64,000 nucleotides of DNA from Mytilus trossulus (taxonomy: Eukaryota). Made by a program: the position numbers and the translations under genes. Shown here one piece after another: positions 28,883 through 64,000 of this stretch. Within the stretch, counting starts at the first letter, position 1. Every line of letters begins with the position of its first letter. Under the pieces are notes generated by a model, which was not told where the DNA came from, searched no databases, and worked only from the letters and a program-made list of their open reading frames with translations. Location: the NCBI RefSeq assembly GCF_036588685.1, contig NC_086380.1, positions 29,326,001-29,390,000 of the forward strand, read 5' to 3'.

Positions 28883-31800
28883 ATGACAGCGGTTTCTTCT
28901 ACAAAAGATTGTTTTAAGATGGAAACTCTAGGTGAAATTTCGAGAAAAGACGGATTTGATGACATAAGGCCAGCACAACCAATCACCGAAGAACAAGACT
29001 ACCATAATTATGACCTTATATCTGTATGTATATTATATTTTTCTTTATGCCGTTTGAGTTGATTCGATTCTCTTAGTCATGATAAAAAAAAAGATTTTCC
29101 ACTCTTTTTCATTATTATACTTTTTCTGTCCAATAGTCGACTTTTTGGGAATTTGCTGAGAGATTCTTATCGTACCAACACATCTATTGTTTCTTTATAC
29201 GGTTACCATGGTCCTAATTTTAACCAGGAAATCTATATGACAAATATGATAAATCAGGTCATGAATGAGATGTTGTAATAAAAAACACCAAACAACAGTA
29301 TCAGTAAAGAACCCTTGCTTAAGAATGTGTCTATTTGAAAGATAACTGTAAGTGCCGCCACAAAATTAAAAGGTCTACTTGCAAATTCTTATGACGTTTG
29401 AATTTCAGACTGTATGCGGCTTGCTAAAAATGATCTGGTAAACTACTTTAAAACAGTATAACACAAATACGGAACCCTCTGGCTTTAATAAATTCCAAGA
29501 GGAAAAATTAAAAAAAATTGACAGAATCAAAAGATAGAGTTTTCAACTTAACATTAATACTTCCAGGCAATCTGGATCTAACATATAGGCTTGTTTTAAT
29601 TTTAGACATTTAAATTTCAGACGTTCCACTGCAAATTAAGATAGATGTTTGTTTTTTCTTCATTATATCCTTTTATACATTTATAAAAATCTGTTTCAAA
29701 ACAACGTTAGTTTCTCTGGTGAATTTGAATCTAAAGGTATCTATTAGTTTGATATGTGCAGGTAAAACTTTGTTATTTTTGGTAGTGTTTGACTTTTTTA
29801 TATTTGTATATATTAAACGATTGGATGGACAATATTTTGATGAATTGTCATTTTCGGAAAATTTTGGAAACGCAGTCGAGGAGACATTAAATAGACATGG
29901 CGTGATGATTGTTTATTCATAACTATACATTTCCAAGCATTGGATTGTTCACAGATAATTTGAATAATTATTTATATTGAAATAAATCTTTTTTTATAGA
30001 CCGAAATTCAAGATGAACCACGAGTCCAGGGTTATTTATCTTATTTTTCTACTTTTGCTGGAGAAAAAATTACTGATCGCTATGCTGGAGGTTTGTGTCT
30101 TTGCAAGAAGTGTTTATATTCATATATACTAGTAGATATGTTATTCGGATGCTAAAATCATAATATTAATGAGAATGTTATCAAAACCTTCGCATTTACG
30201 CATATTTGAATGATAATAGTGACTACACTCAATATCTCTTAATAAGGGACATGCAATGTAAAAAGTAAAATAGCAAAAATACCGATTACAAGGAAAATTC
30301 AAATCTGAAGACCCTTGTCAAAAGGAAAATCAATGCTGAAGCACATCAACCGAATTAAAAACAAATATCTATACCTGAATGCGTCCAAGTATTTCCATGT
30401 GTCGGAAATGAGGGATTAAACCATCTTCCAATGCTAGTTAAACCTCTTAATTGTATGACAGTCAATAAAATTTCACAATAATAAAAGCAAAGCTTGAACT
30501 AACAGAAATAATATGTGAACATGTCAAAATAAGGAGTTCTTCAATTACCTATGTGTCATCAAACGTATCTTCAATACAGTTTTCAATGAATAAAGCAAAC
30601 CAAGCCGATACATGGAGTATTTCTAAATGAATTAAAAATTTGTCAGTATGCCAAATTTCAATTCATCAATACATCAAATGTAATGAAGAATTGAACATGG
30701 TTAAAGCTACTTCATGTAATGCATAAAATTAACTAACCAAGCCACCTACTGATACTCATGTTAGTAAAGGTGAAAAATCCATTCAAATTTGTATAAATGT
30801 TCATTGGAAGCAATATTATAGATTAAAGGTAGGTTTTTTGAGCTGATATAAAATCGTGAAAAAAATCCATTTACATGTTCTTAAACCTGGAATTTATATA
30901 TTTAAAGAAAAAATCAAAGAACGGTCAAGAGTAGTCAAAACATCATGGACACCCAAGGAAGATATGCAGTTAGGCACAATAGTCAAGGTGAAGAAATCAG
31001 GAAAAGAAGTACATGTGCAATGGGACAAGCTTGAAGAGAAAGTTAACCAGTTAGATCTCCGCTTACTTGACAATGCGCCAACAGGTACGATCAAATTGCA
31101 TTTTTTTAAACTTTAATTTTTATTTTGAAAAGGTCACTCGTTCTAATCACCGTCTCAAGGTCTTTAATCCTTAATTTTTGTTATTTATCATTTCGAGTTA
31201 ACGAATTGTTTAATTGGATAGAATTACGGATCAAAATTCGCCTAAAAAAAATAAAATGTGGCATATTAGGCCATTGCACTAAATTAAAAAAACACGCAAA
31301 AAATATCAAATTAAATGAGAATTTGATCAATAGATTCACACTAAATCACAACCCCAGTTATCATGACCATTTAAGTGTTGACCTCTGAGTTCATAATTAC
31401 CGAAAAGATTTCAGTAAGTAAACGTCAATTTTGAAAGTCATTTAACGACTGGCATATTGCAAAGTGTAAAACCGAAGGAAACCACCAAGTGCATGGATGA
31501 CAGATTTAACCTTGCATTTCTCACCTGTAGGCAATCGTCGAATTTCTGCTGTGGTAGATATCATTATTTTAGGTGCGATTCTGCTTCCAATCGACGTTTA
31601 TTTTGTAGAGAATAATTAACGGTTTCGCGATGATGGTAGGCAATACAGCCCTTGACCACTGTCATCGACGAAAACAGGTCTTGCAGTTATGTGGTGATTG
31701 TCAACATTTGGAAAAACAATCGGTTGACAAACTTCCCTGATGTATCCATCACCTTCAATATTTTTCTCGTTTGGTCTCAAAGACTCAATCGGACATTTGT

Positions 31801-34800
31801 TACATACGACAGAAACCGGCTTTCGTCCGACAAATGAGTCTTTTAAGTTCAAACCATCTTATAGAAAACACAATACCTAACGCAATCATAGATGTCGATA
31901 AGATAACATGAGACGTCTTATTAATGTTGACTTCTTGATTGTTTTTGGTTGTAATGTACCTATTTTAAGCTTAAGGTAACCATTATCCTTTTGGAACAGA
32001 AATATTTGCAAATGGCATTCTAAGCAGGTAATGCTTCGAATGGGTTCCACGATCCGTGGAAGTCTTTCACGAAGTTTGTTTAGATGTGTTTCCGGAAGCT
32101 GACTACAGAGTAATGTTACCACATGTGACGTCTATTATCTTTAAAGGAAACCCCAGTTGACTGCAAGTCTATAAATAGTCATATATGAGACTTCGATATT
32201 TGTCTTTGTATCATGTAAACATGAAATGAATAATTTGTCAAAACACCGAACCAAATGGAAGCAAGCGTAAGCATCTTGATATTTGGATATACCATGGAAG
32301 GCATGGTTCACGTGCATGCAATTTCTTTATTAGCAGTAACAGCAGTATTATCACATCTTTTTAACCGAATAATGGTCTTTTTTTTTCGTTTGAGTTGATA
32401 TTTGCGGTAACACAATGTAATTAAATATATAATTGGGTGCTTTTCTTTTGTTTGTTGATATTGGAGCTATAAAGATTCACGTATATTATTGCAATTCATT
32501 GCAACGCTTGAACATTTGTATTTTGCTACTTTAACAACCTTCAACAAGGTTTAAATAATCACTAAACTACTGTCAGCACTCTAAAATGCTTTAACTGTTT
32601 TATGTTTTTTGGCATATTCGTGAAATTGTATACAATGCTACAACTATGATGCTAAATTAGATAATGCCTGTATCTAGTCAGACATATGACTGTTGTTATC
32701 CAATTAGTGTGATGTGTTTGAGCTTTTGATTTTTGCCATTTACTTAGGAATTTTCCATTAAGAATTTTCCCCGAAGCTCAGTATTTGAATTTTTATTGTT
32801 GTCAGGCTTCTGAAAACTAAAAAACGTAAAAGTAAAAGAAAATATCACTTCACTTTTGTTTTAGATCCTAATTAGATACGATTTTTTTTACCTTCCTAAC
32901 GGCTTTAAGTATATTTAGCTGAGGAGTTTAGCATTATCTAAAATACTGATGTTTTTGTTTGCCTTTGACAAAAAGTTGGAATATTCAAGTTACATTTTAT
33001 ATCTTTACAAGTGTACTTTGACAAATAAATGTGAAGAAACACATATTTTTAATTGAATTTTATAAAAATTTCTGAATGATTGTATTTTCTATAGAGAAAA
33101 AAGAAAAAAGTTCAAGAGTAGTATTGATATCTCGAACAACCATAAACAACAGTACAGCAAGCGGCATTCATCCTGAAAGAAAAGTAAACCTTCGTTTATT
33201 GGACAATGCACCCATTGGTATGCACTTCTTATATTTTTTGTTCTGATTGTGAATTCTACGTATTTGCACTTAGCTGAGTCTATATTAATCATATGATTTA
33301 GGGTATTCATAAAAGTCAATGTTATGCATACGGCTCAATATGTATGAAACTTTGCTTTTAACATCAGTTGATAAAATATACTAAAAAAAAGAACAGGATG
33401 ATGATTATTTACAAATAAAGAAATAGGACGAATATAACAAAACATAGCCAATAATTGATGTCTGACTGTTTCGAGAGGATAAAAAATGTATTTGTAATAT
33501 TTTTCAGCAAATCTTCAGGCAAATATTTTTAAATTTTTTACAACGCTTACACAAGCACATATGATATTTCATGGTTGTTACAGCCTCAATCTGGATTGAA
33601 TAAAGATTAGTGACATTTTACACTCTCAAATGCTTTATATCTCTCAGTCTATGGCATATATGTTATACCACTGATGCAATGACCGACAGATTTTCAGAAA
33701 TTTACTGTTTTATATATAACGCATGTGAATTTCTTATATGAATTAAAATCTATCTTATCAATCCGATGCCAAAAAGTTACATGTCAATGTTATACTTTAA
33801 CCCAAATATTCTAGTGGATAAGTTTTGATATTTTGATATTTTGTATTCAAAGACAAAATAGAACATGGAGCAAGAGTAGTAAAAAAATCTTGGACACCTA
33901 AAGAAGAAATGCCTTTAGGCACAATAGTTATGGTGAAGAAAGCAAGAAAAGAAGTTCATGTCCAATGGGACCAGATTGAAGAAAAAGTTAACCTGCATGA
34001 TATACGTTTAGCGTCTGATCTTCATTGCACTAACAGGTATTGCTGTATTGTATTTTGAATAAAAATTATTAATAATGTGCACGTGGCTGTTGTATATATT
34101 TGTTTGAATAGAACGCATAAGCTTTGACATCGGGTTTTTGAAAAAGTGAATTGAAAACATCCTTTTCAAGATATATGTGGAAGTCTTATTTAAAGTCTGG
34201 TTATTTAAAATAAAAAATGAGTTTAATGATATATTAAGAATTAAGTAAGTAAAATTTTCTAACAAATAATACATGTACATATGATTCTATTTTTGTTCTG
34301 CTATAGATTTTTTAATAGCAACAGCATAGTTCTTGCCTGGACATTGTCAGTTTATTTTTTACTAATGATTTTCATATTTGAAAAACGGTATACTACTGTT
34401 ATCTTTATTCGAGTATCCCTTTTAAAACTTATGCCTTTTTTACGGAACCTGATTAGTTGAATTGCTTTTGAATTGAATTAGAAAATATATCGCACAGTCT
34501 TATTGTTATCATCAAATTTTTAATAAATATATTGTAGTATTCATTATTTAAACATAACTGGTTTGTATTTGACATACCATACAGAATATTAATTTCCTTT
34601 CTTTTAAACATAAAATGCATAATTACAAATGTTTACACGTTAACAGATTGCATACATATTTTTCACATTTTTTTGTAGTGAAAAAAAGGAAAGTTCAAGA
34701 GTAGTAAAATTATTGTCAACCGCCAACGAAGAAAATTGTCTAGGCACCATAGTCAAGGTCAACAAAACAAAACAAACCGCTCGTGTCCAATGGGATAAAA

Positions 34801-37800
34801 AACCAGACGAAAAAGTTAAGATGGTTAAACTACGTTTAGTCAGCAATTATCTTACAGGTATTAACTAAATAATGATATCTTTAAAACTGTTAATTGATTA
34901 CTCTATTTATCGCTATTTTGTGATAATTGTTTGTATTATACTACTCCCTTGTGATAGAAATTTATAGCTAGAAACTAAGGATACATGTGGCGTTGCTATG
35001 AAATTAGCAACGTCATCACAGGTAGAATAGCGATAAACAGATAATCATTGGTCACCTCAACTCGATTGCTTTTCTCGCTTTCGCCGTTACGGCTCAAAGC
35101 GAGAAATTCAATATCGTTGAGATGATCAACGATAATCTATAAATATTTTCATAAAAAAAAATTAATCGAGAGACGATTTCGAATTATTGAAAAGTTGAAA
35201 AAGTTGAAAAGAGATCTGCGTCTTATACTAGGTCATGAGATCTATTTCATTACTTGAGTGACAACTAATATTTCAACTTTACGCATACAACGTTTTAATT
35301 CTGTATATTTTAGCTTTTCTCTTGTAACTAATTCTGCTTTAATGAATACTATAATGAGAGTAATCAGTTACCATATAATGTATTGAAACTATTCAACTGG
35401 TACACCACACGAGTTCTATACTCAATAATGTCAAACTATAATTCCATTTTATATGACAAATTAATGTTTACATGCATAACATTTTGAAATACCTGAAACA
35501 TTTAAGCAGCTGTGTGTACTATTTTATGATTCTGTGCGATCTTGTTTTGTGTGTGTTAACAATATACCAGAAATATGCGGTTATTTTAATAATGTAAGCG
35601 AAAAGACCATGTTTCATGTTATTTGATACTGTTATAATATCAATTAAAACCAAACACTGTATATTCCATGCCACGAGCGATATAATAGACCTTCAATATG
35701 TTCAAGAAACAAAACGCTACATTTGAGTACCGAATTAAGCTTAACATCTTCGAATTATGGATTTTTATTTATAGAAAAAATAGAAAATGGTTCTAGAGTA
35801 GTTAAAAGATCACAGACAACAAGAGAAGAAATACCTTTTGGTACAATAGTCAACATAAATCAATTCAAAAATGAAGTTCAAGTTAAATGGGACAAGCCTG
35901 AAGAAAAAGTTGACCCGCTTGACCTTCGCTTATATGACAATGCGCCATCAGGTAGTTCATAGTTATAATTTGTAATTTTTATATGTGATTTATATTTTTC
36001 AAAGTTTGTAAACCTGAAACAATTGTATTCATTTTAAATAAGAAAACATGCAAAGCTTTCGTTGGTATCCGTTTTCGTTAGTCGCATTTATCTATTTGTG
36101 TTTTTTTCATCTTCTCTTTTCTAAAGTTTCAAGAAGGTTTTCAACTATGAGTTCAAAACGATACATTTGAACCAGTATCTTACTTTTAAGTTCACCTAGC
36201 TCTTTGGGCCAAGTGAGACTTTCTCATCACTTTGCGTCCGTCGTCCGTCGTCGTCGTTGTCGTCGTCTGTTAACTTTTACAAAAATCTTCTCCTCGATGG
36301 CAGTTAAGGAGTTATTGCCCTTTATAGTCATTTTTTACCAATTTTTCGTAAATTTTTGTAATCTTTTATAAAAATCTTCTTCTCTGAAACTACTGGACCA
36401 AATTTAATCAAACTTAGCTACAATCATCATTAGGGTATCTTGTTTAAAAAATGTGTGCGGTGACCCAGCCAACCAACCAAGATGGCAGCCATGGCTAAAA
36501 ATAGAACATGGCGGTAAAATGTAGATTTTATAACCAAAGCATTTAAAGCAAATCTTACAAGAAGTTAATTTGTTTATATAGTTAATATCTATCTGCCCTA
36601 ACATTTTCAGATGAATTGATCAACTGGTTGTTGGGTTGCTCCCCCCTCATTTGGTAATTTTGATAGAAATTTAGCCGTTAATGGTTATTATCTTGAACAC
36701 TATTATAGATAGAGATAAACTGTAAACGGCGATAATGTTTAGCAAATGAAGATCCACAAATGCGTCAACAAGACCAAAAAGGTCAGTTGATCCCTAAAGA
36801 AGTTATTGCCCTTTATAGTCAATTTTTACAGTTTTCATTTTTTTGGTAAATTTTGGTAAGTTTTTACAAAATGATTTCCTCTGTAACTAAAGGTCAAAGT
36901 TCATTACAGATAGAGAAAATTGTAAGTAGCAAGACTGATCAGTATAGTATGATCTTCAAACACATTACCATCACCAAAACACAATTTTGTCATCTATCCA
37001 TCTGTTTCCTTTGATTGATATGCACATAGACCAAGGTGAGCGATACAAGCTATTAAGAGCCTCTAGTTAGATATATCTTCCTATCTTTAAGGTAAAGTTA
37101 ACTTTATAAAGTATCAGGCACCGTTGAATTCAGATATATTTGTCTATTATGTTGTTTTTGTCACACACCTTTCTAACTGCTTTATTTCTTATAAATGATT
37201 GCCTTTAAACATTTTACATCAAGTATACCTGATGGTAGTAAATCGTGTAAAGCTTTATCCGCACGATGACCTATAGTTAAAAACTTCTATGTCATCTTGT
37301 GGATTGTTGTACCCACAACAAATATATACCACATCTTCTTATTTTTATGTTTAAAAATGTAATCATAATTGATAATTAAAGTAAAATAAAAATGAAAAAA
37401 GTGCTGTTTTTCCATACATATACTAGTAATGACAGTTAGTCAATTTTGATTGAGACCAGATCCATTATGTTGTGATTGCTGAAATTGAAAAACCTTGTCA
37501 ATGATTGAAAAAAAAATCGTGACCATTATCTTCCTTTTTATGTTATATCCAACGATGTTGGGCATGTCCCTTCATCCTGGTATCTATGATACTTTTATTT
37601 AGGAATTATTTTTGTTGAACGATTTAAAAAAAAGAAATTATGGACGTCATATGTTTCGGTTTGAGAGTTCTGGATGAAGAAATTATATGAAAATAACTTC
37701 GTACTCAGAACATATATCAAACCATGTTTTCATCTCCTCTGAACACTGATCAGTATCGAAAACTAAATCCCGAATTCTAGGTGAATGCAAACAATACATT

Positions 37801-52800: not shown

Positions 52801-55800
52801 ATCAATGAGTTGAAAAGTTGTATAAAGTTTGTAATTAGTGTCATTAGTAGTAGTACGCACCCTGCATATATATTTATTTATATAATATGCGCTTCTTAAC
52901 ATCGTTCATTTAAACAATTATGGGATAATCCCATTTCTTTTACTATTAACGCATTCAGTTGGTTGAATATTTTAAATAAATTACGAAGCAAGTGAGCAAC
53001 CAAAACCCAATAGTCAAAAGATTTTTTAGATAAATATAAGGAAACATTGATATAAATGAAAATCGGGAAATGTGTCAAAGAGCAGATAACCCGACTAAAG
53101 AGCAGAAAACAGCATAATGCCACCTATGGGTCTTCAATACAGCGATATAATACCGCATCCAAAAGAATGTTTTAGTTGACAAAATTTGGCAAGGTTGAAC
53201 ATGTTTTTGATATCTCATAAATCCCCCTATAGTATACTCTAGCCATGTAGAATGGAACAAACACACATCAGTACGTCCATCAAACTCAGTTTACAAGAAG
53301 TCAAGGTCCGATGTCAGAAAAAGTAATGTAACAAAACAAACTAAACAAAATGACTATGATACATACATTAGGACTACTAGCAGTCAAGCTCCGAACCTAA
53401 ATTAAATTGATTGGAAGACAATGCTGTCATCATATGAACATCTAGAACAATCCTTCCGGTTAAGGGTTGAGTATCATACCATTATAGAATAAATGTGTTT
53501 ATTTCCAATGCAAGTACTTTATAAATGAATAAAAACTAAAGTCAATATATGCCATGTTTAACATGTTTAATGACCTGACAGCTGTATCATAACTATATCA
53601 TTTCTTAATGAATCAACTAATAGTTTTGATTGCCTTTGATGTGAAATCCAACATCGTATTGCTTTGTAAAGAATACCCCCATAAAACATTGGATGTGATA
53701 TACATGAAATAATACGATGTTGATTAATATTTACGAATGATGTATTTGTACCGATGACAATATTTTACCTAGTTTGTGATATGATAAACCCTGGTTTTAT
53801 AGGTTTAAAAAAATATATATGTCTTTTGCTAAAATCTAATTCGTTGTAACATACACGAGGGAATCGTATTAAATAAAATTAATAAACCACACAAGATTTT
53901 GTCAAGGGAACGCCATCAACTAAAAATGGACATTTAACAATTGGAAATGGAAAATCATCTTTTTTATCATAATGTTTTGTATTGACCTTCTCGTTAATGA
54001 TATAGATATTTTACTAACGGAAAAATATTTTCGGTATTTTTTTTAACTTGGTTATGTCAAATTATAAGGCAGAAATATAAACAATGCTTTGTATAATAAA
54101 TGTTATACGGAATAAGTACAGTTATACATAATCAAAAACAGATTATTGAAAAAAAACATCGTTATAAAATATGTATAGTAAATTTAAGATTTGATCAATA
54201 TATTTGGTTTACTCTTGTTTTAATGGGAACTTTAAAGTTTGTATAGCGTGTCCTCATTTAATGACAGAAACAAGTATCAAATCAATGGCGCATAACTATT
54301 TCAAAGACATGAAAAATGTGTTATATTTGAATTTTTTCGAAAGGGAAGGAAGCATTTTAAAAAAAATAAAAATCGTACTTTTTGTATCTTCATCTATTTT
54401 AAAGGTTCGCATTAGTCATATATTAGTCGGATGCAAAATTTTACAAGATGCTAGTGACGATAAGAAGAATGAGCAACTACATAGGGAGACATCACAAAGA
54501 TTAAAACTGTAAGGAAAATATCAAATCAGATGCAATATAGAATGTTTTAAACATTAGAAGGCCGTCTGTCAAATTCTTTTAAGTATCCATATTTCATACT
54601 AGTGTGAATGTTATTTAACGCGTTATTATTTAAGGAGTATTAATTCACAAATTTGACTCTAATTCTTATATTCGACTAGTTACATACTAAAACGAATATC
54701 CAAATTATAAAAAGTTTTTAAAAAATCAAAGAATCGATATTATGTTTTAGCATGTCTTGTTGTTTTATTTCAGTTAAAACTCCTTTTAACCATCAAGGTG
54801 ACATTGACAGATTGTCGACTGTCATAGCATCTGTCGAAAAAACTATTATGTTTTGGAACTGCACATTCAAACACTACAGATGCATATTGGTTTAAAATAT
54901 GTTGTATTTTTGCCCTTTACACAATACGGAAAAGATTCATCTACATCATTGCAAACATGATTTGAAAATGATAATAACCGAAGACTATGAACGGGTTAAA
55001 GATAAGCCATTGATAGGTTCGGTCCATATTTGGTATTCAGAAAATGTTTCTTTATTATAGATATTTTACGGAGCGTGCAACCCTAATTACTGGATTTATT
55101 TACGAGGCCACTTCAAACAACGATTTAATTGAAAATGAACTTGATGAACCGGTCAATCATGCTGGGCGTCTTTTGGTGAACCACGGGTATTTAGAGGATG
55201 CGATTAGAACACAAAACAAGCCATTTCTTGAAAACAAAATCGTAACCGATATCCTGCATAAAATGTGGTACGGGGAAGAGGAATCTGTATTCCGGCAGGT
55301 ATGTTATAATTATGCAAACTAAATATATTGCAAACTTATATATTGTGCAATAGACAATAAACTCAACAACTAAAGTTACCCCGAAAACTCACCCGATTAA
55401 AAATGCAATCTTCAAAAAATTATGAGGTTCTTTTCTTGAGAAAACAGAGGCATGTCGTGTTCCAAACGTGTACATGCTATGATTTGTATTTGCCATTTAC
55501 GACTTATTAATAATTAAAAAAAATGACAGTACTGGATAGTTTTTTTTTAAACTTTGAAAATGGTTTGTTTTATATAATGTACCACCATATTTTTTCAAGT
55601 TTTATATATTCCCTCTTTTCATTTATTGTTCAAATTTTTCACATCTGTATTCAAAATAATAACACATTTGTTCAGCCGATTTACATACACTGTTTTATAG
55701 TTTTATTTTTGTTTGCCAGAATGCTTGATACCCTATATGTATATGGTCCAGCCATTTATTATCATAATATGTGTACGTTTCAGAATATCAAACAGTCTGG

Positions 55801-58800
55801 TGTTTAATTGTGCACATAACTGTAATTGTATTTTCTATTAACGACCTAATATATAACTTCTATAATGACACTACTGGGTACAAATATTTTCTTATTATTA
55901 ACAACCTTTGCAGTATTGTATAGTTAACCACAATCTTCTAAAGTTTGATATTTTCATTTTTTTAAATGATCTACAATTTCAATATAGAACAAAAATAAAT
56001 AAAAAAAAAAGAATTAGACATTCGGCTAACGGTTAAGTTTGTTGTAAACATATATATTTATAGTGGATTGGGAAACAAGTAATTGCAACTTATATTCATC
56101 CCTTTACACTCTGCGGGTGTGAGTGCTGCCTTGTAGCGGCATTAGCCAACTCTTTCAAAATCTACAAGAATGTGCAAGAATTATGGCTTTCTCTTAACAC
56201 AGGTCAACCATTTATCGTCCCCTCCCGACGAACTATCATCGTTCCCTCAAGACCATACTCGCAAATGGTGTCAATGAAGAGCCGGAAATTCAATCCCTGA
56301 AAAGTCGGCTCTCCCTTGACATATGTAAATATATGATGACAAGTCATGTGTAGACAATTCAAATTTTGCTTTTATTTTTTTTTTAATTTTCGTATTTTAT
56401 TTGGTTATTATCATTATGTTTTATCTTTGATATTATAAGTTAGTGATATTGATAAACCAAAGATTCCCTCTTCTTATTATATATGTGTAACCATGCAAGA
56501 TTTTTGTGTACATGAGTATTGTGCCAAACTATCACGTCTGCTAACAGTTCATTTAAATGATAAATAAATGATGAGATTAATTAGATATTTTGTATTCTAA
56601 GGAATCTGTTTTGAATAGTTCTTACAATACGTACGTTATACTTGTTTTACCTTTTGGTTATATATTGAGACGTTTAAACGTCTTTAAAGCTCAGAACATT
56701 TATCTTAGCAGTTGACTGTTTGATGGTTTTAAAGAATTGACTAATTTTATATAATTTACGTTTTTAATATTTTGTGTAGTGTTAATATGGTTAAAAGGCA
56801 GTAGTAATTTACCAAATTGAATGTAATTTGTAAGGGCAAACCCATTCTTGTACGGAATGTGCAACTACATGTACCTGCAAAAACATACTACTTGTGATTC
56901 ATATAAACAAAAAACTGTAAAGATGTCTGTTCGTGTTTAAATTAACAATACATGGGGAAACCTTTTGTGCAAAATAAACACATTGTCATAAGTGCTTAAG
57001 AAGAATTTTTTACTTCCATTATCACTAAAATATAATATTTTAGCTAAGGGACCCGCTGAAAAACGCCTCCGGGTGCGGGATTTTCCGGAGGTATTAAAGA
57101 ACCATTGATGGCTTTAAGCTATATGCCGATATTTGGTCGTATTGTTGTCTTTTTGACACATTCCCCATTTCCATTCTCAATTTCATTAGGTATTTGAAAT
57201 GTATCAGGGAGGTTTATTTTTGGAATGATTAAATTTTGTTCAAAGACAAAATATACAATATGTTCTATATATCACGACACCAACTCGCATTTATAAAGAT
57301 CTGCAGTAATGTTGGGTTAATAATACTTGTATACAACATGTGACTTATTGAAGGGATAATCAAAACCAAAGAGTTGCAAATTTCAAACTAACACCATGTC
57401 AAAACGAAAAAGAACACAGATACACACAACCAAAGGTTACGATACATAAACAACCCTGTGAATGAGTTCACATACTCCGGAACCTCAAACAGTATCTTTT
57501 TAACGTTTTATCATGACAAAGTACAACGAACAACACATGATCTACACTGTAAATATTTAACTCAATGCTCTTTATTTTTTTACTTGTTTGGCTTCATAAA
57601 TATTTTGATATGAGCGTCACTGATGAGTCTGATGTAGACGAAACGCGTGTTTGGCGTTCTTAATTATAATCCTGGTACTATTTAGGTTGGCATTTTCATC
57701 CTGTTGGCCCTGTTACATTTACTTGTGATGCCAGTGTTAATGATCAACATTACAGCTCCTCCTCTTAAATGGTAAGTACTCAATGCATCATTGTAATGAT
57801 TTCTAAAAATGACAACATGCATGAAAAGATTCAAAAATTAGTAAAGGTTTGTATCATAATCTATTGAAAGGGAGAAGAAGATTTTTTTTTTTATTAATCT
57901 TGCATTTGGTGTATTAATGACACCATCTACAATAAAGTTTGGATTGATATGAAATCGATGTGATTACCACAATTACAAATGTAGCTGTCATATCATATTT
58001 TAATTAGTACTTATAAATGTGAACAACCTATTTAAATTATCGTATCAAGTACCATACCTGCTCTACAGTCGGGTTTTTGTCTCTGTGACACATCCCAATT
58101 TCCATTGTCAATATAGTTTACTTCAAATACTACATGCATGTTTTAAATAGATATAGGAAGATGTGGTGTGAGTGCCAATGAGACAACTCTCCATCCAAAT
58201 AACAATTTAAAAATTAAACCATTATAGGTTAAAGTACGGCCTTCAACACGGAGCCTTGGCTAACACCGAACAACAAGCTATAAAGGGCCCCAATATTACT
58301 AGTGTAAAACCATTCAAACGGGAAAACCAACGGTCTAATCTATATAAACAAAACGAGAAACACGTATATATTACATAAACAAACGACAACTACTGTACAT
58401 CAGATTCCTGACTTAGGACAGGTGCAAACATTTGCAGCGGGATTAAACGTTTAAATGGATCCAAACCTTCTCCCTTTTTCTGAAACAATAGCATAACATC
58501 ACAACATAGAAAAATATACGATAACATATCAATTGTCAGACTTAACTCAATCAAAAAACGTATGATTACACAATGAACGAATAAATTTGATCTGCGATAT
58601 CAGAATACAAATGCACAGTTTATTAAGACAAACATTCATGACCAAAAAGCTAAAAAACAAATTCAAACACACTGAGAAATATTTAACCAATCAATGTTCA
58701 CTTTAGAAATAAACCGGTCTGTTAAATGTCTGTATTTCAACATATAACAGTTTAACCTTTTTATAATGTAACTTTATGATGTTTGATGATTACTATGTGT

Positions 58801-61800
58801 GGGTTTTTTGCCATACGTGAAGCTTTTATCTGCCTTCCCTTCCGGAGCACCTATATCACCTCTACTTTTTTATGGGGCTGGTGTTGATTAAACTTTAGTT
58901 TTTTTAAATTTTGTTTCAAGTGAACTATTGTTTGTCTGTTTGGCTTTTTTTCATTTTGAGCCATGACGTTCCAGTTTATTTTCGATTTATGAGTTTCTCT
59001 GTCCCCCTGGTATCTTTCGTCCCTCTTTTAGTAGATGATAATTTTAAAAGAATGTACGTTAAATCAAGGAAATAAAGATATAATGCAGTGTTTTTTGTAG
59101 GTTCTACCGGAAATACAATCTTCCTTTTATGAAAGCCTTGATTCAAATGGTAAGAAATATTTATTTCCTTTAAGGAAACATACGATATACCACCATCTAA
59201 TGGTCAACTGAATGAAAGTTCTATGTAAACATATTTGAAGATTTATTAAGAAATATATATCGATTGACTTTACGAAAAAAAATGTAAATGCAGAAAAATT
59301 AAGATGGGGAAGCTGCATATCAAACGATATATCTAAACTTACATAACAATAAACGATTTCTAAAAGCAGTAATTGAATAGCTTTTTATCGTGATAACAGC
59401 TTAGTATGGTATGCGAGGTTTGTCTCTTATTTATGATTTGAATATGAATTATATAATACTAAATTTATATCAGAAAAATCAATTTAATTTCATACGAGTG
59501 AAGTGAGAGGTTTAGCTAGCTATAATACCAGGTTTAATACACAATGTTCTACATAAGAGAATATATGTACCATTTCTGGAATATGACAGTTTTAACCATT
59601 AAATTGAATGTGTTTTAGCTGTGATGTTGTCTTTTGGTTAGGGACTTTTCTGTTTTAATTTTGGGCGGACTTTTTGTGATTTTACCTTTTTGACAACTTA
59701 AAAGTATATTAACATAAAATTATAGAGCATTTTGTTTTGCAATCGTTAAAGTTGATCTGCTCATATTTTAGCTTGGATACTTGGCTTTGCTGATGATATA
59801 TGCATACATGTTGCTCTTTAACTACATACATGAAGTATTTTCTTGGACAGATGGAATAATAGTAGGGTGGATGATCAGTTTTTTGCTCAATGAAATTAAG
59901 CAGGTATATAAAATAGTTGTATTGTTTTTAAATTCTTTTTTTAAAGAAAAAAGTATCTGCTATGATTTAATAGTTGCAATAGAACCTTGCGTACATTTGA
60001 ACCAAAAAGTATGAGTCTCCGTGAAATACTTCTAGTAATTCTGACACCAAACTATGTGTCATACGACAAGACTTACTTTACTGTATGCATTGTTTAGCCT
60101 ATATACCATAATTAAAAAAAATACAAATCTGTCCATTCAATGACATAGATGTTTCTAAGTGAGATTTTCTTTTCAAATGCATTTAAGTTTTCGGTCTACG
60201 GTTTATTTATAGTTTGAGCACAATAGTAATTAATCATGATTAAAATGTCTGAAATCATTACCCAGTGGCAATAAAAATGTACTGTAATTGCAAGAAACAA
60301 TCACCAATAAATTGCTTTGGTGTATGAAATATAAAACTCCATTTGTATGTGATAAGGGGTATAATATGTGTTTTACCAGATTTTTCTAGCATGGAAACGC
60401 TACTTAGGGGAAATAATTGTATTATCTCTTTTGTTGACATAACCATGATTTTAAATGTCTAAAAAGGGAATCTGAATTAAATATTATAACCTCCCTCGTG
60501 TATAGATGAAGCGGTTATATTTCTTTCGAAAATATATGGTCATTTGATTATTTAATAGAGTAAAGGTATGCATACTTTTAATGTGATCATAAGAGCTAGC
60601 ACGAAGAAAGCACGAAATCTTCTAGAAAACAAAACACGAACACACAAAAGTAAATGCATGATTTCAAATTCTTTGTAACCACTTTGTTGTCATTACGAAA
60701 CTCATGTTATTTCTTCACTGAAGCAATATATTTTGAAAAAATCACATAAGTCATGTTAGTTTTTTCGAAAGTTACATGATGTCAAATCTACTAGAATGTT
60801 CTATTTCAGTGTAATAAATGGAAGAATGGATAGTTTTTGGTTTATTCCTACCAATGATTCTAAGTGAAATTCTAAGATGAAAAAAAACCGATTACTGTCA
60901 AATAAATTTAAGATCAGACATGTTTTAAGTAAGACATACACATTCATAGTACTCAAAATAGCAACATCAATGTTGATAGTACGAGCAAACGGTATTTCAT
61001 ATACACAGTGTTTTATTCATGTATATACAAATCAATAATATAGTTTTAAGTTACACTTTGGTTTTTGAAGGCAATTGTTTCAGCTATAAGACATAGATTT
61101 AAACGGTATATGTGTAATGTATGGAACCTCTTAGATTGGACTGTCATGCTTGTGTACGCAATTGGAATGTTTTTAAAATTGGGAAAGGATGTTACATATG
61201 AAGACTCGACAAAAATATTATTGGTTTTAACTTTTATTCTACTCAGCATTCGCATATTAAACATGTTTAGCATATCTGAATATCTTGGACCGAAACTTGT
61301 GATAATTCAGAAAATGGTAAGATTAATTTAACATATTGACAGAAGAAAACAACAATACTCCCCAAAAAAGACACGTCATCATAATTTTATTTGACAATTA
61401 TTCCACTTTAAAAATGCTGATTAATTGCAATAAACTTGTCCAGTTTTAAGAACTTTTGTGCTGACTTGAAATATATATGTTCCGCTTCTGTGAATTTAGA
61501 GTTTATACAATGTTGCAATCTTGAATTCAACAGAGTAATCTAAACAGAAAGATTATCAAAAGAGCACAACTTTCACAAACGTTCGGTAGTTAAAGCCTTG
61601 AACGTCATTATGTTTGATACATTGTGAGTCTTCAGCAGGCAAACCACTTGTCTGCGGCACCAAATCATACACATGGTTTCTGTAATAAGGTTTGCTGACA
61701 GCGAAATACCAGTATTTTGTATTATATGCACAGTTGTCTATATTGCATACTGTGGTCACAGTAAGGCATGACTACAGTTATTTTATTACAGGCTTTTGTT

Positions 61801-64000
61801 TGAATCAAGCAACAGAAGCATAATAAATGTCTTTGGTGAGAAACTCATTCTTGACATTGATAAGCTGACATCACAGAGCTCAACACAATAAAGGACATTT
61901 GAGTATAATGTTCACATAAAGAGAGACTGACGATGCAAAAGTGATATGCAGACTCGCATACTAACAGAAAATTCAATATTAAAAAAAAACACCTGAAAAT
62001 AGGAGCAGTCAATATTGATTTTATATCAGCGCGTGTAGATCTAAGGAATAAGATAATACAGTTACACAGATAAAATTATATAACTTCATACAAGTGGTGT
62101 CCCAAGTTGATATAATGTATACATCAATATGTAAACATAAATGTCCTTTTTTCTTGTTTAAAGGTTTTACTATCTAATTAAATAATATGCATACAGAAAT
62201 AAACACACGAAACATAATATATAAATAAGAAGTACTGTTTCACATATGATTTTTGATTTGATTGTGTACATGTTGTTCGATTGATTTGAAAACTTTTTCT
62301 CTGTTTTCAGTTCAAGGACACATTTGTCTTTCTTGTTATTTTAACAGTTATCATGACGAGCTACAATGTGTCATATCATTCCTTGCTCTACCCAAACTCT
62401 GAACTTAGTTGGGCAGAGATAGAGAATGTAATGCAGAATGGTTATTGGACGCTTTTTGGAGAAGTTGGGTTAATAGACAGCGAAACACGTGGGTTAACTA
62501 ATAATCTAATAAACTGTTAAGCTCATCTCTCAACTTTGTGTGTGTTTCCGTTATGTCTATGTTTTCATTTAAGCTGTTGTTGTCATTCAAACTCGTATGC
62601 TATCAAATTTTATCACTGAATTAACAAAAACTGTTCTAGGAAGATTTCCCTTTATGTGAAAAGTTCAGTTCTGACTTAGATGACGTCTCGCAACATGACA
62701 CACTATAGAAAGTAACATACTTTGAACCAATAGAGCATGAAAGAGTATTCTATGGAAATTTATCTCAATAATTTTGACAAATTCATGTACAATGATGTAT
62801 TGATCACACAGTTCTTCGAAACTATCGTTAGCAATATGAATAAATTTTAGATTTGTCAAGTTCTAGAAATGTTAATCTGTTTGTATTTTTTCGTTTAAAC
62901 AAACAAGAGCTGAAATTATCTTAATTTACTTTTAGTATCTGATTGTACTGACGACAAAAACATTTACACTAGTAGTAACCATACACTGAAACGGGATAGA
63001 TGTCCGACGCATTTGGGAATACACATTTCACCATATTTGAAAGCCCTCTATGGTTTGATTGCAGTGATTATACTTTTGAATTTGCTCATAGCAATCTACA
63101 GGTAAGATTTCAAACAGGTGATATTGATAGTTAGGATCATTTGGTATAATATCTGTTTAATAGAGCAAGTTCAGCAGTTAAGTATAATATTTATTAAAAA
63201 TAAACTCATCATAGATACCAGGACTAAATTTTGTATATGTGCAAGAAGCGCGTTTCGTCTACAAAAGACTCACCAGTAAAGCTCGAATCCAAAAAGAATA
63301 TTAAGGCCAAATAAAGTACAAAATCGCTATGGTTAGATGTTGAACTCAATGAATAAATGTTAAAAATACTAATTGTTCAACCTAAACTAACAGTCATGAA
63401 CTATGTTGGTTTAACATGTTCAATACCACAATTTATATTCCTATATTAGTCTTTGTTAAATTTGCACTTTTCAAAAAATTGTCAACAAATTATCTGTATT
63501 TCAAATAAAGAAATACTTGTCATGTTTTTTCCGGTCCAGTACTATACACAAACTTTCACAAAATACTTCATTGTATAAGATAATATACTCATCACTAGAA
63601 GTTAACCAATCAAATTGTCACCTATTTTTCATCCGTGTACAAATTTTAGTACACAAATAACCTCAATATTTAGAAATATTCTATAGGAACACCCAAATGA
63701 AAAAATAATGCTGACTTAAAACACTAAGATATATGTTCATGATCCAGAAATGCTTGACTGTAATGTAATGTAGAATTAAATTTTCACAAATGTCAAATCC
63801 GGGGAATACTTTATGTAGACCTTTTTTTTGGCAAGCAACCGGATGTGACGTACAATAATTTGATAGTTTTACACCTGTAACTCTTCTTTAATATGAAATA
63901 TATACTTCTGTACATCTTGTTAAAAGTCATATACATAGATTATGATGCTGATACTAGACGAATATTTTCAGTGATACATATAAAAAAGTGAATGATGAAT
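28883..64000 (+). CDS. Divergent TRPM-like cation channel with N-terminal Mib/Herc2 repeats and ZZ zinc finger (3'-partial, about 1270 aa in window)
   Basis: In-phase GT-AG exon chain: 28883-29023, 30000-30090, 30908-31084, 33095-33217, 33853-34036, 34679-34857, 35775-35951, 38045-38216, 38976-39082, 42416-42562, 44112-44164, 44745-44889, 45274-45380, 46706-46796, 47249-47361, 47605-47824, 48329-48357, 49508-49636, 51827-51917, 52645-52751, 54405-54508, 55061-55298, 57686-57771, 59101-59149, 59772-59903, 61071-61316, 62311-62488, 62936-63101, 63972->64000. TRPM hallmarks: ILVGCKIL, LHKMWYG, NEIKQ, WNLLD, LGPKLVIIQKM, YWTLFGEV, LLNLLIAIYSDTY. The middle exons (44-52 kb) and the start codon are least certain. 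Confidence 0.85.
30908..35951 (+). CDS. Array of five paralogous exons, each encoding a shortened Mib/Herc2-like (SH3-like) repeat
   Basis: Exons 30908-31084, 33095-33217, 33853-34036, 34679-34857 and 35775-35951 share SRVV...LGTIV.V....V.VQWD...EKV...DLRL.DNAP. This matches Mind bomb ARVV...GTV...VVVWD...DLRILDSAPTG. Confidence 0.8.
35038..35138. repeat. Long imperfect hairpin (MITE-like)
   Basis: agataatcattggtcacctcaac..gattg..tttctcgcttt [gccgttacggc] aaagcgagaaa..caat..gttgagatgatcaacgataatct. Confidence 0.75.
36187..37068 (+). mobile_element. Helentron-associated non-autonomous element (HINE / DINE-1 / pearl-like)
   Basis: 5' sub-terminal repeat ttcacct with nearby partner aagtgag, (gtc)n microsatellite, degenerate internal repeats (ggagttattgccctttatagtca twice), 3' aggtgagcga plus short hairpin before ctagtt. 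Confidence 0.7.
38045..38216 (+). CDS. ZZ-type zinc finger exon (Mind bomb-like)
   Basis: Translates GVKHANVTCDECYTYPLRGIRWKCLHCDSYDLCTVCYMVDEHNVNHIFSRI, with 6 Cys and 2 His ligands in ZZ spacing. The supplied ORF 38072-38299 is in the wrong frame. Confidence 0.93.
40260..40932 (-). mobile_element. tRNA-derived (SINE-like) element as a partial tandem (period 441 bp) between TA-repeat flanks
   Basis: Identical segments of about 230 bp at 40261-40492 and 40702-40932. The minus strand carries A-box tggtcgtgtgg and B-box ggttcgaatcc (tRNA-like 40335-40428 and 40776-40869) but has a poor acceptor stem. Confidence 0.75.
40942..41790 (-). mobile_element. Partial-tandem repeat element (period 549 bp) carrying a hammerhead ribozyme; Penelope-dependent/retrozyme-like
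   Basis: Near-identical direct repeats of about 300 bp at 40942-41245 and 41491-41790, with a hammerhead in the spacer and (TA)n at both flanks. Confidence 0.75.
41306..41347 (-). ncRNA. Minimal type I hammerhead ribozyme, second sequence family
   Basis: Minus strand catca-CTGAAGA-gaca tatat tgtc-GAAA-tctag-ATC-tggtg. Stems I and II pair; stem III is the palindrome ATCTAGAT. Confidence 0.85.
42886..43467. mobile_element. Non-autonomous TIR DNA transposon (about 35-bp TIRs)
   Basis: aaaggagtaggggcattaaggcc..tttggccca ... tgggccaaa..ggccttattgcccctactccttt. Internal inverted pair gtgcgca.ccaagaaacaactt / aagttgtttcttgggtgcgcac. Confidence 0.85.
45421..46378 (+). mobile_element. Helentron-associated element (HINE/pearl-like) with about 4.8 tandem 168-bp internal repeats
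   Basis: 5' tatacccccgc with inverted partner aggggggtata, (gtcc/gtca)n microsatellite, 168-bp units from about 45520 to 46320, 3' gcgggggtat plus gtgagcagtagcttgc hairpin, T-rich flanks. Confidence 0.85.
49766..49807 (+). ncRNA. Hammerhead ribozyme motif with damaged stem II (retrozyme fragment about 49715-49842)
   Basis: cgtca-CTGATGA-ttcg tatgt agac-GAAA-cgcgc-GTC-tggcg. Confidence 0.55.
50889..51016. repeat. 21-bp minisatellite, about 6 copies
   Basis: Unit atacttgaccaaatctgaacc with variants. Confidence 0.85.
57615..57656 (+). ncRNA. Minimal type I hammerhead ribozyme motif, sense to the TRPM-like pre-mRNA
   Basis: cgtca-CTGATGA-gtct gatgt agac-GAAA-cgcgt-GTT-tggcg. Ends 29 nt before exon start 57686. 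Confidence 0.72.
57686..63101 (+). CDS. Pre-S1 and S1-S6 transmembrane/pore exons of the TRPM-like channel
   Basis: Hydrophobic exons 57686-57771, 59101-59149, 59772-59903, 61071-61316, 62311-62488 and 62936-63101. Filter LFGEV, pore-loop Cys pair (SDCTD...RCP) and S6 LLNLLIA. Confidence 0.92.
58146..58700 (+). repeat. Long copy of the abundant SINE-like interspersed repeat
   Basis: atagatataggaagatgtggtgtgagtgccaatgagacaactctccatcc...; shorter copies occur elsewhere in the window (see 5372). Confidence 0.8.
63199..63320 (-). repeat. Retrozyme-family fragment with mutated hammerhead core
   Basis: Minus strand reads ctGGtga-gtct tttgt agac-gaaa-cgcgc. A similar inactive copy lies at 12086-12130. 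Confidence 0.7.

What the first reader, a model, noticed from the sequence alone, without database searches (positions are those of the whole stretch)
28883..64000. Mind bomb MZM module fused in frame to a TRPM-like ion channel
Seen: one phase-consistent exon chain runs from Mib/Herc2-like repeats (..DLRLYDNAPSG) through VKH-ZZ finger and a further repeat ending FYPDHLPILGK. It then goes directly into DTLGHVDVDF (like the TRPM N-terminal DAFGxIxF motif) and on to S1-S6. Known: Mib/Herc2-ZZ-Mib/Herc2 ending FYRDHCPVLG is the substrate-recognition MZM module of the E3 ligase Mind bomb, normally followed by REP, ankyrin and RING domains. None of those appear here, and canonical TRPM channels do not carry MZM. 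Inference: exon shuffling made a channel whose cytosolic N-terminus recognises peptides or proteins, i.e. a possible protein-gated or immune-sensing TRP channel. I do not know of a characterised protein with this architecture, but cannot search.
Basis: partly seen in the sequence, partly recalled or inferred. Interest (0 to 1): 0.9.

Follow-up and report, generated by a model that had tools for sequence, protein, structure and literature searches.

The report
Mind bomb module fused to TRPM-like channel
This mussel gene really does encode an ion channel of the TRPM type whose inner end carries the protein-recognition module of the Mind bomb ubiquitin ligase. The same design recurs in a dozen copies in this genome and in oysters, yet nobody appears to have studied it.

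Summary
The window is Mytilus trossulus (G000 C8:29,326,001-29,390,000). I reproduced residues 1-1248 from 28 exons in the window; all 27 introns are AG/GT.

- **N-terminal module:** five tandem degenerate Mib/Herc2-like exons, a ZZ finger with all eight zinc ligands, and a second Mib/Herc2-like domain. Together they align colinearly with the MIB1 MZM (PDB 4xi6, E 2e-22 for a 93%-identical orthologue).
- **Junction:** a phase-1 intron (42563-44111) joins the module to the channel.
- **Channel:** it is TRPM-derived. The only significant PDB sequence hits to the membrane part are TRPM (E 1e-31; family profile 4e-55). A predicted fold matches TRPM8/4/3/2 at Z 20-24. The S2-S3 Ca2+-site residues and the TRP box are kept. 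The first melastatin domain is too diverged to confirm.
- **One gene:** gene models in five Mytilus species and three oysters cross the junction. Twelve loci in this genome keep a ZZ exon upstream of the channel on the same strand.
- **Not supported:** protein gating or immune sensing remains inference, and a CARD-bearing model looks chimeric.
- **Literature:** no paper found describes this architecture.

The parts
28883..29023 (+). Exon 1 (coding start)
   Evidence: The RefSeq model starts at the ATG at 28919. M. edulis and M. californianus orthologues start 12 codons earlier, equivalent to 28883.
30000..30090 (+). Exon 2, N-terminal leader (residues 36-65)
   Evidence: Exact match to P0001. 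A similar ..STFAG..IT.. leader precedes the MZM in oyster P0017.
30908..31084 (+). R1, Mib/Herc2-like repeat exon (177 nt, phase 1 to 1)
   Evidence: Boundaries. Predicted as an SH3-like barrel, Z 6-7, tied with Tudor, KOW, HERC2 and MIB1. 92-98% identical to orthologues.
33095..33217 (+). R2, truncated repeat exon (123 nt, lacks the middle ~18 residues)
   Evidence: Less conserved than R1: 85% identity to M. californianus.
33853..34036 (+). R3, repeat exon (184 nt, phase 1 to 2)
   Evidence: The frame shift is compensated by R4.
34679..34857 (+). R4, repeat exon (179 nt, phase 2 to 1)
   Evidence: R3+R4 = 363 nt, so the two must be spliced together to keep the frame.
35775..35951 (+). R5, repeat exon acting as the first Mib/Herc2 domain of the MZM (177 nt)
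   Evidence: Its second half aligns to MIB1 residues 39-69 in one continuous alignment with the ZZ. 97% identical to M. californianus.
38045..38216 (+). ZZ zinc finger exon
   Evidence: Pfam ZZ E 2.8e-10. MIB1 4xi6 E 1.3e-16, HERC2 ZZ E 7e-15. The CxxC..CxxC..CxxC..HxxxH ligands are all present. A second AG at 38046-38047 (six bases, AAGGAG, hold both acceptors) would put the exon start at 38048, 3 nt downstream of 38045.
38976..39082 (+). M2a, linker and first half of the second Mib/Herc2-like domain
   Evidence: Aligns to MIB1 residues ~126-165.
42416..42562 (+). M2b, second half of the second Mib/Herc2-like domain, ending FYPDHLPILGK (phase 1 out)
   Evidence: Aligns to MIB1 up to ..FYRDHCPVLGE, residue 231, the end of the MZM.
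42563..44111 (+). Junction intron between the MZM and the channel (1549 nt, GT..AG, phase 1)
   Evidence: The spacing between the same two flanking exon types is 2-8 kb in six paralogous loci.
44112..44164 (+). First channel exon (DTLGHVDVDF..., 53 nt, phase 1 in, 0 out)
   Evidence: It has no in-frame ATG, so it cannot start a separate protein.
44745..48357 (+). Exons 12-17: alpha/beta domain in the position of TRPM MHR1/2 (residues 506-740)
   Evidence: Exon list. Predicted with pLDDT 80-90 as alternating strands and helices. Only weak links to TRPM SLOG: hhalign P 0.033 and Foldseek nvTRPM2 E 0.03.
49508..55298 (+). Exons 18-22: helical MHR3/4-like region and pre-S1 (residues 741-963)
   Evidence: Model residues from ~440 on align with TRPM8/4/3/7/2 chains from ~420 on, Z 20-24.
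57686..63099 (+). Exons 23-28: S1-S6, pore and start of the TRP helix (residues 964-1248)
   Evidence: The E/Q (S2) and N/D (S3) Ca2+-site residues, the LGPKLV linker, the FGE pore motif and LLNLLIA in S6 are conserved.
63964..64000 (+). Start of exon 29; the last ~165 residues lie beyond the window
   Evidence: tblastn of P0001 residues 1247-1258.

Best explanation
**What it is.** This is one protein-coding gene of Mytilus trossulus, LOC134727554. It encodes a 1412-residue subunit of a TRPM-derived cation channel. The cytosolic N-terminus carries a Mind bomb-type MZM recognition module without any ligase parts.

**Shown here**
- The exon chain, its phases and its splice sites.
- Homology of R5-ZZ-M2 to the whole MIB1 MZM.
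- Five-fold tandem duplication of the first Mib/Herc2 exon.
- Homology of the membrane part to TRPM, with retention of the S2/S3 Ca2+-site residues, the TRP box and the pore motif.
- Conservation of the whole architecture in mussels and oysters and in twelve loci of this genome.

**Inferred (about 0.85 likely).** Transcripts run from the MZM exons into the channel exons.

**Inferred mechanism (about 0.35 likely).**
- The subunits form a tetrameric, Ca2+-dependent non-selective cation channel, like TRPM2/4/5/8.
- The four N-terminal MZM arms lie at the outer rim of the cytosolic ring. They bind a short peptide motif or free N-terminus of a partner protein, as the MIB1 MZM binds the Jagged1 N-box and ZZ fingers bind N-terminal peptides.
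- Binding would either anchor the channel at a particular membrane protein or bias gating through the adjoining melastatin-homology domain.
- With no RING domain, the module can only recognise; it cannot ubiquitinate.
- R1, R5, ZZ and M2 are as conserved as the channel itself. R2-R4 evolve faster, so they may be spacers or variable contact surfaces.
For: **Exon model**
- It is exact.
- The junction sequence and phases were read directly.

**Gene models crossing the junction**
- M. trossulus P0001, M. edulis P0157 and P0153, M. californianus P0158, P0159 and P0161, and M. coruscus P0160.
- M. galloprovincialis P0155, plus P0154. P0154 is split from its channel half at a later intron, not at the junction.
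- Divergent paralogues and oysters keep the same continuity: P0166, P0170, P0172, P0174, Saccostrea P0017 and P0173, and Ostrea P0181 and P0200.

**Linkage in this genome**
- Twelve loci on C8, C11, C12 and C14 have a ZZ exon 23-105 kb upstream of a channel S3-S5 exon on the same strand.
- My rough estimate of the chance expectation is about 0.001 per channel locus.
- Six loci have the last MZM exon 2-8 kb upstream of the first large channel exon.

**MZM homology**
- P0154 residues 330-500 align with MIB1 residues 39-231, E 2.1e-22.
- P0017 residues 79-299 align with MIB1 residues 9-233, E 3.5e-36, with Pfam MIB_HERC2 at 1.3e-18.

**TRPM homology**
- Sequence.
- Fold: Foldseek E 1e-20 over more than 1000 columns and VIA Z 20-24.
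- Conserved functional residues.

**Clade and constraint**
- The family is one clade with 100/100 support, and ZZ-bearing members occur in every subclade.
- Constraint by domain is given.
Against: - No transcript-derived protein spanning the junction turned up.
- All the support for the join comes from gene predictions and comparative genomics.
- Some long family members lack an MZM (for example P0177, 1131 aa). The channel can therefore exist without it, and MZM-less isoforms of this gene are possible.
- The repeats fail Pfam MIB_HERC2, and the MZM part is modelled with low confidence (pLDDT 30-75). Binding competence is not shown.
- The first melastatin domain cannot be confirmed as SLOG.
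- The fold model used an alignment that included canonical TRPMs, which favours a TRPM-like outcome.
Confidence: 0.75

Rival explanations
1. Two adjacent genes have been wrongly joined by gene predictors. One would be a short MZM-only protein ending by read-through after 42562 (..GKGYSY, stop). The other would be a separate channel gene with its own promoter in the 1.5 kb gap.
For: - No RNA reads were seen.
- Read-through of the donor at 42562 gives a stop four codons later.
- Older M. edulis and M. coruscus annotations name separate 'MIB' and 'TRPM2' fragments.
- M. galloprovincialis RefSeq has two models at this locus.
Against: - The split models do not break at this junction. P0154, P0208 and P0165 all run from the MZM into the alpha/beta domain.
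- The first channel exon has no in-frame ATG and enters in phase 1, matching the MZM exon.
- Linkage, order and strand are kept in twelve loci on four chromosomes and in oysters. This is not expected of two independent genes over that time span.
Confidence: 0.08
2. The fused full-length form exists, but it is one of several products. Internal promoters or alternative splicing would also give MZM-less channels, MZM-only proteins, or forms with fewer repeats. This is not exclusive of the best explanation.
For: - M. californianus has at least 27 predicted isoforms of the orthologue.
- M. edulis isoform X2 skips a transmembrane exon.
- R1, R2 and R5 are symmetric phase 1-1 exons that could be skipped without a frame shift.
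- A second AG three bases downstream of the ZZ exon acceptor gives an alternative exon start at 38048.
- MZM-less relatives exist.
Against: - All inspected orthologue models include all five repeats.
- At least one 'isoform' (X27) is really the neighbouring paralogue.
- No RNA data were examined.
Confidence: 0.3
3. The N-terminal module of this particular copy is a decaying relic. The repeats would have lost peptide binding and serve only as a spacer, so the protein is functionally an ordinary TRPM-like channel.
For: - No repeat passes Pfam MIB_HERC2.
- The tryptophan- and glycine-rich signature seen in the oyster domain is gone.
- R2 is truncated.
- R2-R4 are the least conserved parts.
- Model confidence is low.
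Against: - Open frames, including the paired R3/R4 frame compensation, are kept in five Mytilus species.
- R1, R5, ZZ and M2 are 89-98% identical between M. trossulus and M. californianus. That equals or exceeds the channel domains at 88-92%.
- All eight zinc ligands are intact.
Confidence: 0.15

Closest known systems
Mind bomb E3 ligases MIB1/MIB2 (MZM module; PDB 4xi6, and 4xi7 with the Jagged1 N-box peptide)
   Same: - Mib/Herc2 - ZZ - Mib/Herc2 in the same order and spacing.
- The same ..D.AP.G|.KH junction into the ZZ and the same ..FY.DH.P.LG. ending.
- Colinear alignment at E 2e-22, and E 3.5e-36 for the oyster relative.
   Different: - No REP repeats, ankyrin repeats or RING fingers, so no ligase activity.
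- The first Mib/Herc2 domain is amplified five-fold and degenerate.
- The module is followed by an ion channel.
TRPM channels, nearest by similarity to TRPM2-like (beta) and TRPM3; solved examples are nvTRPM2 6co7, the TRPM2 chanzyme 8sr8 and TRPM8 9p90
   Same: - S1-S6, the S4-S5 linker and S6.
- The TRP box and C-terminal helices.
- The helical MHR3/4 region.
- The four S2/S3 Ca2+-site residues.
   Different: - Separated from canonical TRPMs by a long branch of 1.75 changes per site.
- Pfam LSDAT_euk and TRPM2-like domains are not detected.
- No NUDT9H or kinase domain.
- An MZM sits at the N-terminus in place of the usual leader.
TRPM 'chanzymes' (TRPM2-NUDT9H, TRPM6/7-alpha-kinase)
   Same: They set a precedent for a TRPM channel fused to a module borrowed from an unrelated protein family (PMC13143021).
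   Different: Those modules are C-terminal and enzymatic. This one is N-terminal and a binding module without catalytic parts.
HERC2 (Mib/Herc2 domain next to a ZZ finger that binds the N-termini of histone H3 and SUMO1; PDB 6ww3, 6ww4)
   Same: The ZZ exon scores nearly as well against the HERC2 ZZ (E 7e-15) as against MIB1.
   Different: There is no HECT or RCC1 context. The flanking second Mib/Herc2 domain and the FY.DH.P.LG ending are Mind bomb features.

Membership tests
TRPM channel family | Six-transmembrane channel domain homologous to TRPM S1-S6 | tested here: met
   The best 60 PDB hits of P0001 are all TRPM chains, E 1e-31 to 1e-22. A family-only profile gives E 4e-55 against nvTRPM2 and TRPM3.
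TRPM channel family | TRP helix/box directly after S6, and C-terminal helices | tested here: met
   W..Q...L.EEY after S6 aligns with the TRPM W.FQR..L..EY. Profile matches extend into the TRPM3 C-terminal helices. A predicted long C-terminal helix is present.
TRPM channel family | N-terminal melastatin homology region 1/2 (SLOG fold; Pfam LSDAT_euk) | tested here: inconclusive
   - Pfam LSDAT_euk is absent here but present in canonical relatives P0048 and P0049.
- The family profile gives no PDB sequence hit for this part.
- hhalign pairs the LPV.IS..NG / IPII..K motifs with the TRPM motifs at P 0.033 only.
- Foldseek against nvTRPM2 gives E 0.03 over 212 columns.
- Some whole-chain alignments start at model residue 275, matched to TRPM2 residue 174.
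TRPM channel family | Helical MHR3/4 region between the alpha/beta domain and S1 | tested here: met
   VIA-align Z 20-24, 430-550 residues aligned. Model residues 440-1097 align colinearly with TRPM8/4/3/7/2 residues ~420-1130. Caveat: this is a predicted model, and its alignment included canonical TRPMs.
TRPM channel family | Placement inside a named clade (alpha, beta, beta-like, gamma TRPM, or TRPS) | tested here: inconclusive
   The tree shows a 100/100 split of the family from 16 canonical TRPM-like sequences on a long branch. No TRPS sequences, no labelled gamma or beta-like references and no outgroup were available.
TRPM2/4/5/8-type Ca2+-activated channels | Glu and Gln in S2 and Asn and Asp in S3 forming the Ca2+ site (established from TRPM4, TRPM2 and TRPM8 structures; my own knowledge) | tested here: met
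   E768, Q771, N790 and D793 (P0155 numbering) are at least 90% conserved across the family and canonical TRPMs. Function was not tested.
Mind bomb E3 ligase (MIB1/MIB2) | MZM module (Mib/Herc2 - ZZ - Mib/Herc2) | tested here: met
Mind bomb E3 ligase (MIB1/MIB2) | Ankyrin repeats and C-terminal RING fingers | tested here: not met
   Pfam finds neither in P0001 or any of 31 family members. Real MIB2 shows them. This protein is therefore not a Mind bomb ligase.
ZZ-type zinc finger | Eight zinc ligands, CxxC..CxxC..CxxC..HxxxH | tested here: met
   Pfam ZZ at 40.3 bits against a 21.4 cut-off. All ligands are visible in the alignment with MIB1.
Mib/Herc2 domain (Pfam PF06701), for repeats R1-R5 | Match to the family profile | tested here: not met
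   - There is no Pfam hit for any repeat exon and no MIB1 hit for R5 alone.
- Homology is supported indirectly. A profile of R1-R5 finds the Pfam-defined domain of oyster P0017 (residues 75-144, 17 bits).
- The predicted fold is an SH3-like barrel, tied with many small barrels.

The most novel reading that the evidence does not exclude
Mussels and oysters have evolved a multigene family of TRPM-derived channels that are switched or positioned directly by protein ligands. The ligands would be captured by an N-terminal Mind bomb MZM module. The tandemly amplified, faster-evolving Mib/Herc2 repeats would act as a diversifying recognition surface. This would be a one-protein route from peptide recognition to a Ca2+/cation signal, possibly used in stress or innate immune sensing.
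Probability: 0.2. Interest if true: 0.85.

Novelty: new variant of a known kind. Interest (0 to 1): 0.62.

Why it matters
- **Known precedents.** TRPM channels are known to borrow enzymatic modules at the C-terminus (NUDT9H, alpha-kinase), and those fusions define how the channels are gated.
- **A different logic.** An N-terminal substrate-recognition module from a ubiquitin ligase would mean recognising a protein or peptide rather than a small molecule. It sits next to the domain that receives ligand signals in TRPM2.
- **What the family explains.** It accounts for part of the unexplained 'TRPM2-like' expansion reported in oysters and mussels (21 copies in C. gigas, PMC8004665; 167 TRP genes in Mytilus, bioRxiv 2024.05.23.594666). 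Those expansions have so far been discussed only in terms of heat sensing.
- **Practical advantages.** The family offers natural variants with one MZM, two MZMs, five-fold repeats or none, which are ready-made controls for experiments.
- **Annotation.** Many database entries called 'MIB' or 'TRPM2' in bivalves are halves of one protein.

Tried and rejected
2. **Oyster intron positions.** The look-up of encoding contigs for oyster P0173 was meant to compare intron position at the junction.
3. **Transcript-derived proteins.** A search for proteins spanning the junction returned only genome-based models. The one transcript-like contig protein, P0180, starts inside the alpha/beta domain.
4. **CARD + ZZ + channel (M. 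edulis P0167) as an immune link.** Rejected for this genome. The CARD exon belongs to a family of at least 14 copies at C8:54-57 Mb. None lies near the channel cluster at 29.4-29.75 Mb, so the model is probably chimeric.
5. **Single repeat exons.** Against Pfam and PDB they gave nothing.
6. **Fold of the N-terminal half (P0154).**
   - Mean pLDDT was 57.
   - Foldseek gave no match at E<=0.001.
   - VIA-align showed only generic SH3-like barrels for R1.
7. **SLOG identity of the alpha/beta domain.** It was not established.
8. **Rfam.** At gathering thresholds it found nothing in the window.
9. **Joined spliced model.** I neither built nor searched one from the window. Searches used single exons by reference, or database proteins returned by the tools. 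only checked the database protein against the window.
Full report
**What the window is**

The window is 31% G+C animal DNA. It lies at G000 C8:29,326,001-29,390,000 of a 1.3 Gb assembly. A search with one channel exon returned a 1412-residue protein, P0001. This is RefSeq XP_063448005.1, "uncharacterized protein LOC134727554 [Mytilus trossulus]". Where tblastn matched, its exons are 92-100% identical to the window.

**Checking the observation**

I read the splice sites directly. I then threaded P0001 through the window with a script.
- Residues 1-1248 are reproduced exactly by 28 exons. All 27 introns are AG/GT. The last ~165 residues lie beyond the window.
- The critical join is real at the sequence level. 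Exon 10 (42416-42562) ends ..FYPDHLPILGK plus one base, followed by GT. Exon 11 (44112-44164) follows an AG and supplies two bases, giving D, then TLGHVDVDF....
- Exon 11 has no in-frame ATG.

I searched the window exon by exon by reference. I did not build or search a joined model of my own. The full-length sequences used in searches are database proteins returned by the tools.

**The N-terminal module**

- The ZZ exon passes Pfam ZZ. Its best solved relative is MIB1 (4xi6, E 1.3e-16), then the HERC2 ZZ. All eight zinc ligands are present.
- The M. galloprovincialis orthologue P0154 is 93% identical to P0001. It aligns in one piece with MIB1 residues 39-231 (E 2.1e-22). That stretch runs from the second half of the first Mib/Herc2 domain, through the ZZ and the second Mib/Herc2 domain, to ..FYRDHCPVLGE.
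- The exon 10 boundary therefore falls at the end of MZM homology.
- The five upstream exons R1-R5 are copies of the first Mib/Herc2 exon. None passes Pfam or finds MIB1 alone.
- A profile of the five finds the Pfam-defined MIB_HERC2 domain of an oyster relative over its full length.
- R1 is predicted as an SH3-like barrel. It ties with Tudor, KOW, HERC2 and MIB1 barrels at Z 6-7.
- R1, R2 and R5 are phase 1-1 exons. R3 (184 nt) and R4 (179 nt) shift the frame in opposite senses, so they must be included together.
- All five repeats, in the same order, occur in M. edulis, M. californianus and M. coruscus, and in a 76%-identical paralogue.
- Between M. trossulus and M. californianus, R1, R5, ZZ and M2 are 89-98% identical. 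That is as high as or higher than the channel domains at 88-92%. R2-R4 are 80-85% identical.

**The channel**

- P0001's 60 best PDB sequence hits are all TRPM chains (E 1e-31 to 1e-22). They cover pre-S1 to the TRP helix.
- A profile built from family members only gives E 4e-55.
- I modelled P0155 with AlphaFold2. It is 1123 aa, is the M. galloprovincialis orthologue starting at R5, and belongs to the same 90% cluster. The model has pLDDT 72.5 and pTM 0.66.
- Foldseek matches the model to the TRPM2 chanzyme, nvTRPM2, TRPM3 and TRPM8 at about E 1e-20 over more than 1000 columns.
- VIA-align gives Z 20-24, with model residues ~440-1097 colinear with TRPM residues ~420-1130.
- The caveat is that the input alignment contained canonical TRPMs.
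- The alignment shows several conserved features:
  - the S2 Glu/Gln and S3 Asn/Asp that form the Ca2+ site in TRPM2/4/5/8 (the site itself is from my own knowledge of those structures);
  - the LGPKLV S4-S5 linker;
  - an FGE pore motif;
  - LLNLLIA in S6;
  - a TRP box.
- The alpha/beta domain right after the MZM (residues ~488-740) is confidently predicted. It cannot be shown to be the TRPM SLOG domain:
  - there is no Pfam LSDAT_euk hit;
  - hhalign gives P 0.033 on the expected motifs;
  - Foldseek against nvTRPM2 gives E 0.03.
- On a tree of the membrane region the family is one clade (100/100). It sits on a long branch away from 16 canonical TRPM-like sequences. The nearest canonical sequences are named TRPM2-like. 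TRPS and outgroups were not available.

**One gene or two?**

The case is therefore comparative.

1. Every gene model inspected crosses the junction.
   - This covers five Mytilus species, including several isoforms, and Saccostrea cucullata, S. echinata and Ostrea edulis.
   - Where annotators split the locus, they split it elsewhere. M. galloprovincialis P0154 runs from the MZM through the alpha/beta domain and stops by read-through of intron 17.
2. Within this genome, twelve loci keep the arrangement.
   - They lie on C8 (a tandem array at 29.36-29.75 Mb plus one at 24.1 Mb), C11, C12 and C14.
   - Each has a ZZ exon 23-105 kb upstream of a channel S3-S5 exon on the same strand. Several have two ZZ exons.
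   - With about 30 ZZ exons in 1.3 Gb, my rough estimate of the chance of such a neighbour is about 0.001 per locus.
3. In six loci the last MZM exon lies 2-8 kb upstream of the first large channel exon.
4. ZZ-bearing members occur in every subclade of the family tree. The fusion therefore predates the mussel-oyster split. ZZ-less entries are mostly truncated models sitting next to near-identical ZZ-bearing ones.

I put the single-gene reading at about 0.85. Some long members truly lack the module (P0177).

**How it probably works**

- **Shown:** a recognition module without ligase parts is attached to the N-terminus of a well-preserved TRPM-type channel.
- **Inferred:**
  - It forms a tetrameric, Ca2+-dependent cation channel.
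  - Its MZM arms bind a short motif or N-terminus of a partner protein. PDB 4xi7 is MIB1 MZM-REP with the Jagged1 N-box peptide, and 6ww3/6ww4 are HERC2 ZZ fused to the SUMO1 and H3 N-termini (titles).
  - Binding would anchor the channel or bias gating through the adjacent alpha/beta domain.
- I give this mechanism about 0.35.
- Nothing tested here supports an immune role. The CARD+ZZ+channel model P0167 is probably chimeric, because the CARD exon family lies 25 Mb away.

**Known or new?**

- The protein is in RefSeq and UniProt, but only as "uncharacterized", "ZZ-type domain-containing", "MIB" or "TRPM2" entries.
- Full-text searches found no description of the architecture.
- None of these mention Mind bomb or zinc fingers:
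  - the 2026 survey of TRPM domain gains and losses (PMC13143021);
  - the TRPS paper (PMC7306681);
  - the oyster TRP survey (PMC8004665);
  - the abalone TRP survey (PMC12980990).
- The mollusc "hotspot" preprint (bioRxiv 2024.05.23.594666) describes TRPM expansions in Mytilus and oysters. The twelve passages shown to me discuss expansion and heat stress only and do not mention this architecture.
- I class the finding as a new variant of a known kind: a TRPM-derived channel with a novel N-terminal fusion. It is confirmed at the level of gene structure and evolution. Transcripts and function are unverified.

Noticed in passing
G000 C8:29.36-29.75 Mb (window plus ~360 kb downstream): The window gene is the first of a head-to-tail array of five or six paralogues. 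ZZ exons lie at 29,364,017; 29,422,924; 29,502,275; 29,597,182; 29,672,793 and 29,710,732. Channel exons lie at 29,387,050; 29,456,843; 29,555,071; 29,626,470 and 29,752,949. Several matches contain stop codons, so some copies may be broken.
   Followed up: partly
window 33853-34857: R3 (184 nt) and R4 (179 nt) shift the frame by +1 and -1, so only joint inclusion keeps the reading frame. The arrangement is kept in all Mytilus orthologues inspected.
   Followed up: yes
window 45521-46320: A 168-bp tandem repeat (4.8 copies, 97% matches) sits in the intron between exons 13 and 14. It creates a spurious 333-codon open frame on the + strand.
   Followed up: partly
window 40223-41650: Two copies of a ~440-bp element (identical ORF pairs at 40223-40482 and 40610-40923) are followed by another duplicated segment (40929-41099 and 41436-41648). 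They lie in the intron between M2a and M2b and look like a dispersed repeat.
   Followed up: no
window 38045-38048: There are two acceptor AGs three bases apart at the start of the ZZ exon (six bases, AAGGAG, hold both). The exon can start at 38045 or 38048, which would add or drop one residue before VKH.
   Followed up: no
G000 C8:54.19-57.49 Mb: At least 14 near-identical (88-98%) copies of a CARD-encoding exon lie on both strands. They were found with the N-terminus of M. edulis P0167 and are unrelated in position to the channel cluster.
   Followed up: partly
window 48329-48357 and downstream intron: M. galloprovincialis RefSeq splits the orthologous gene here. P0154 reads through this donor (..NKQKIYVSSNLPC, stop), and P0152 starts in the next exon. 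This is likely an annotation artefact or a truncated isoform.
   Followed up: partly
window 1-64000: Rfam at gathering thresholds finds no RNA family anywhere in the window.
   Followed up: no
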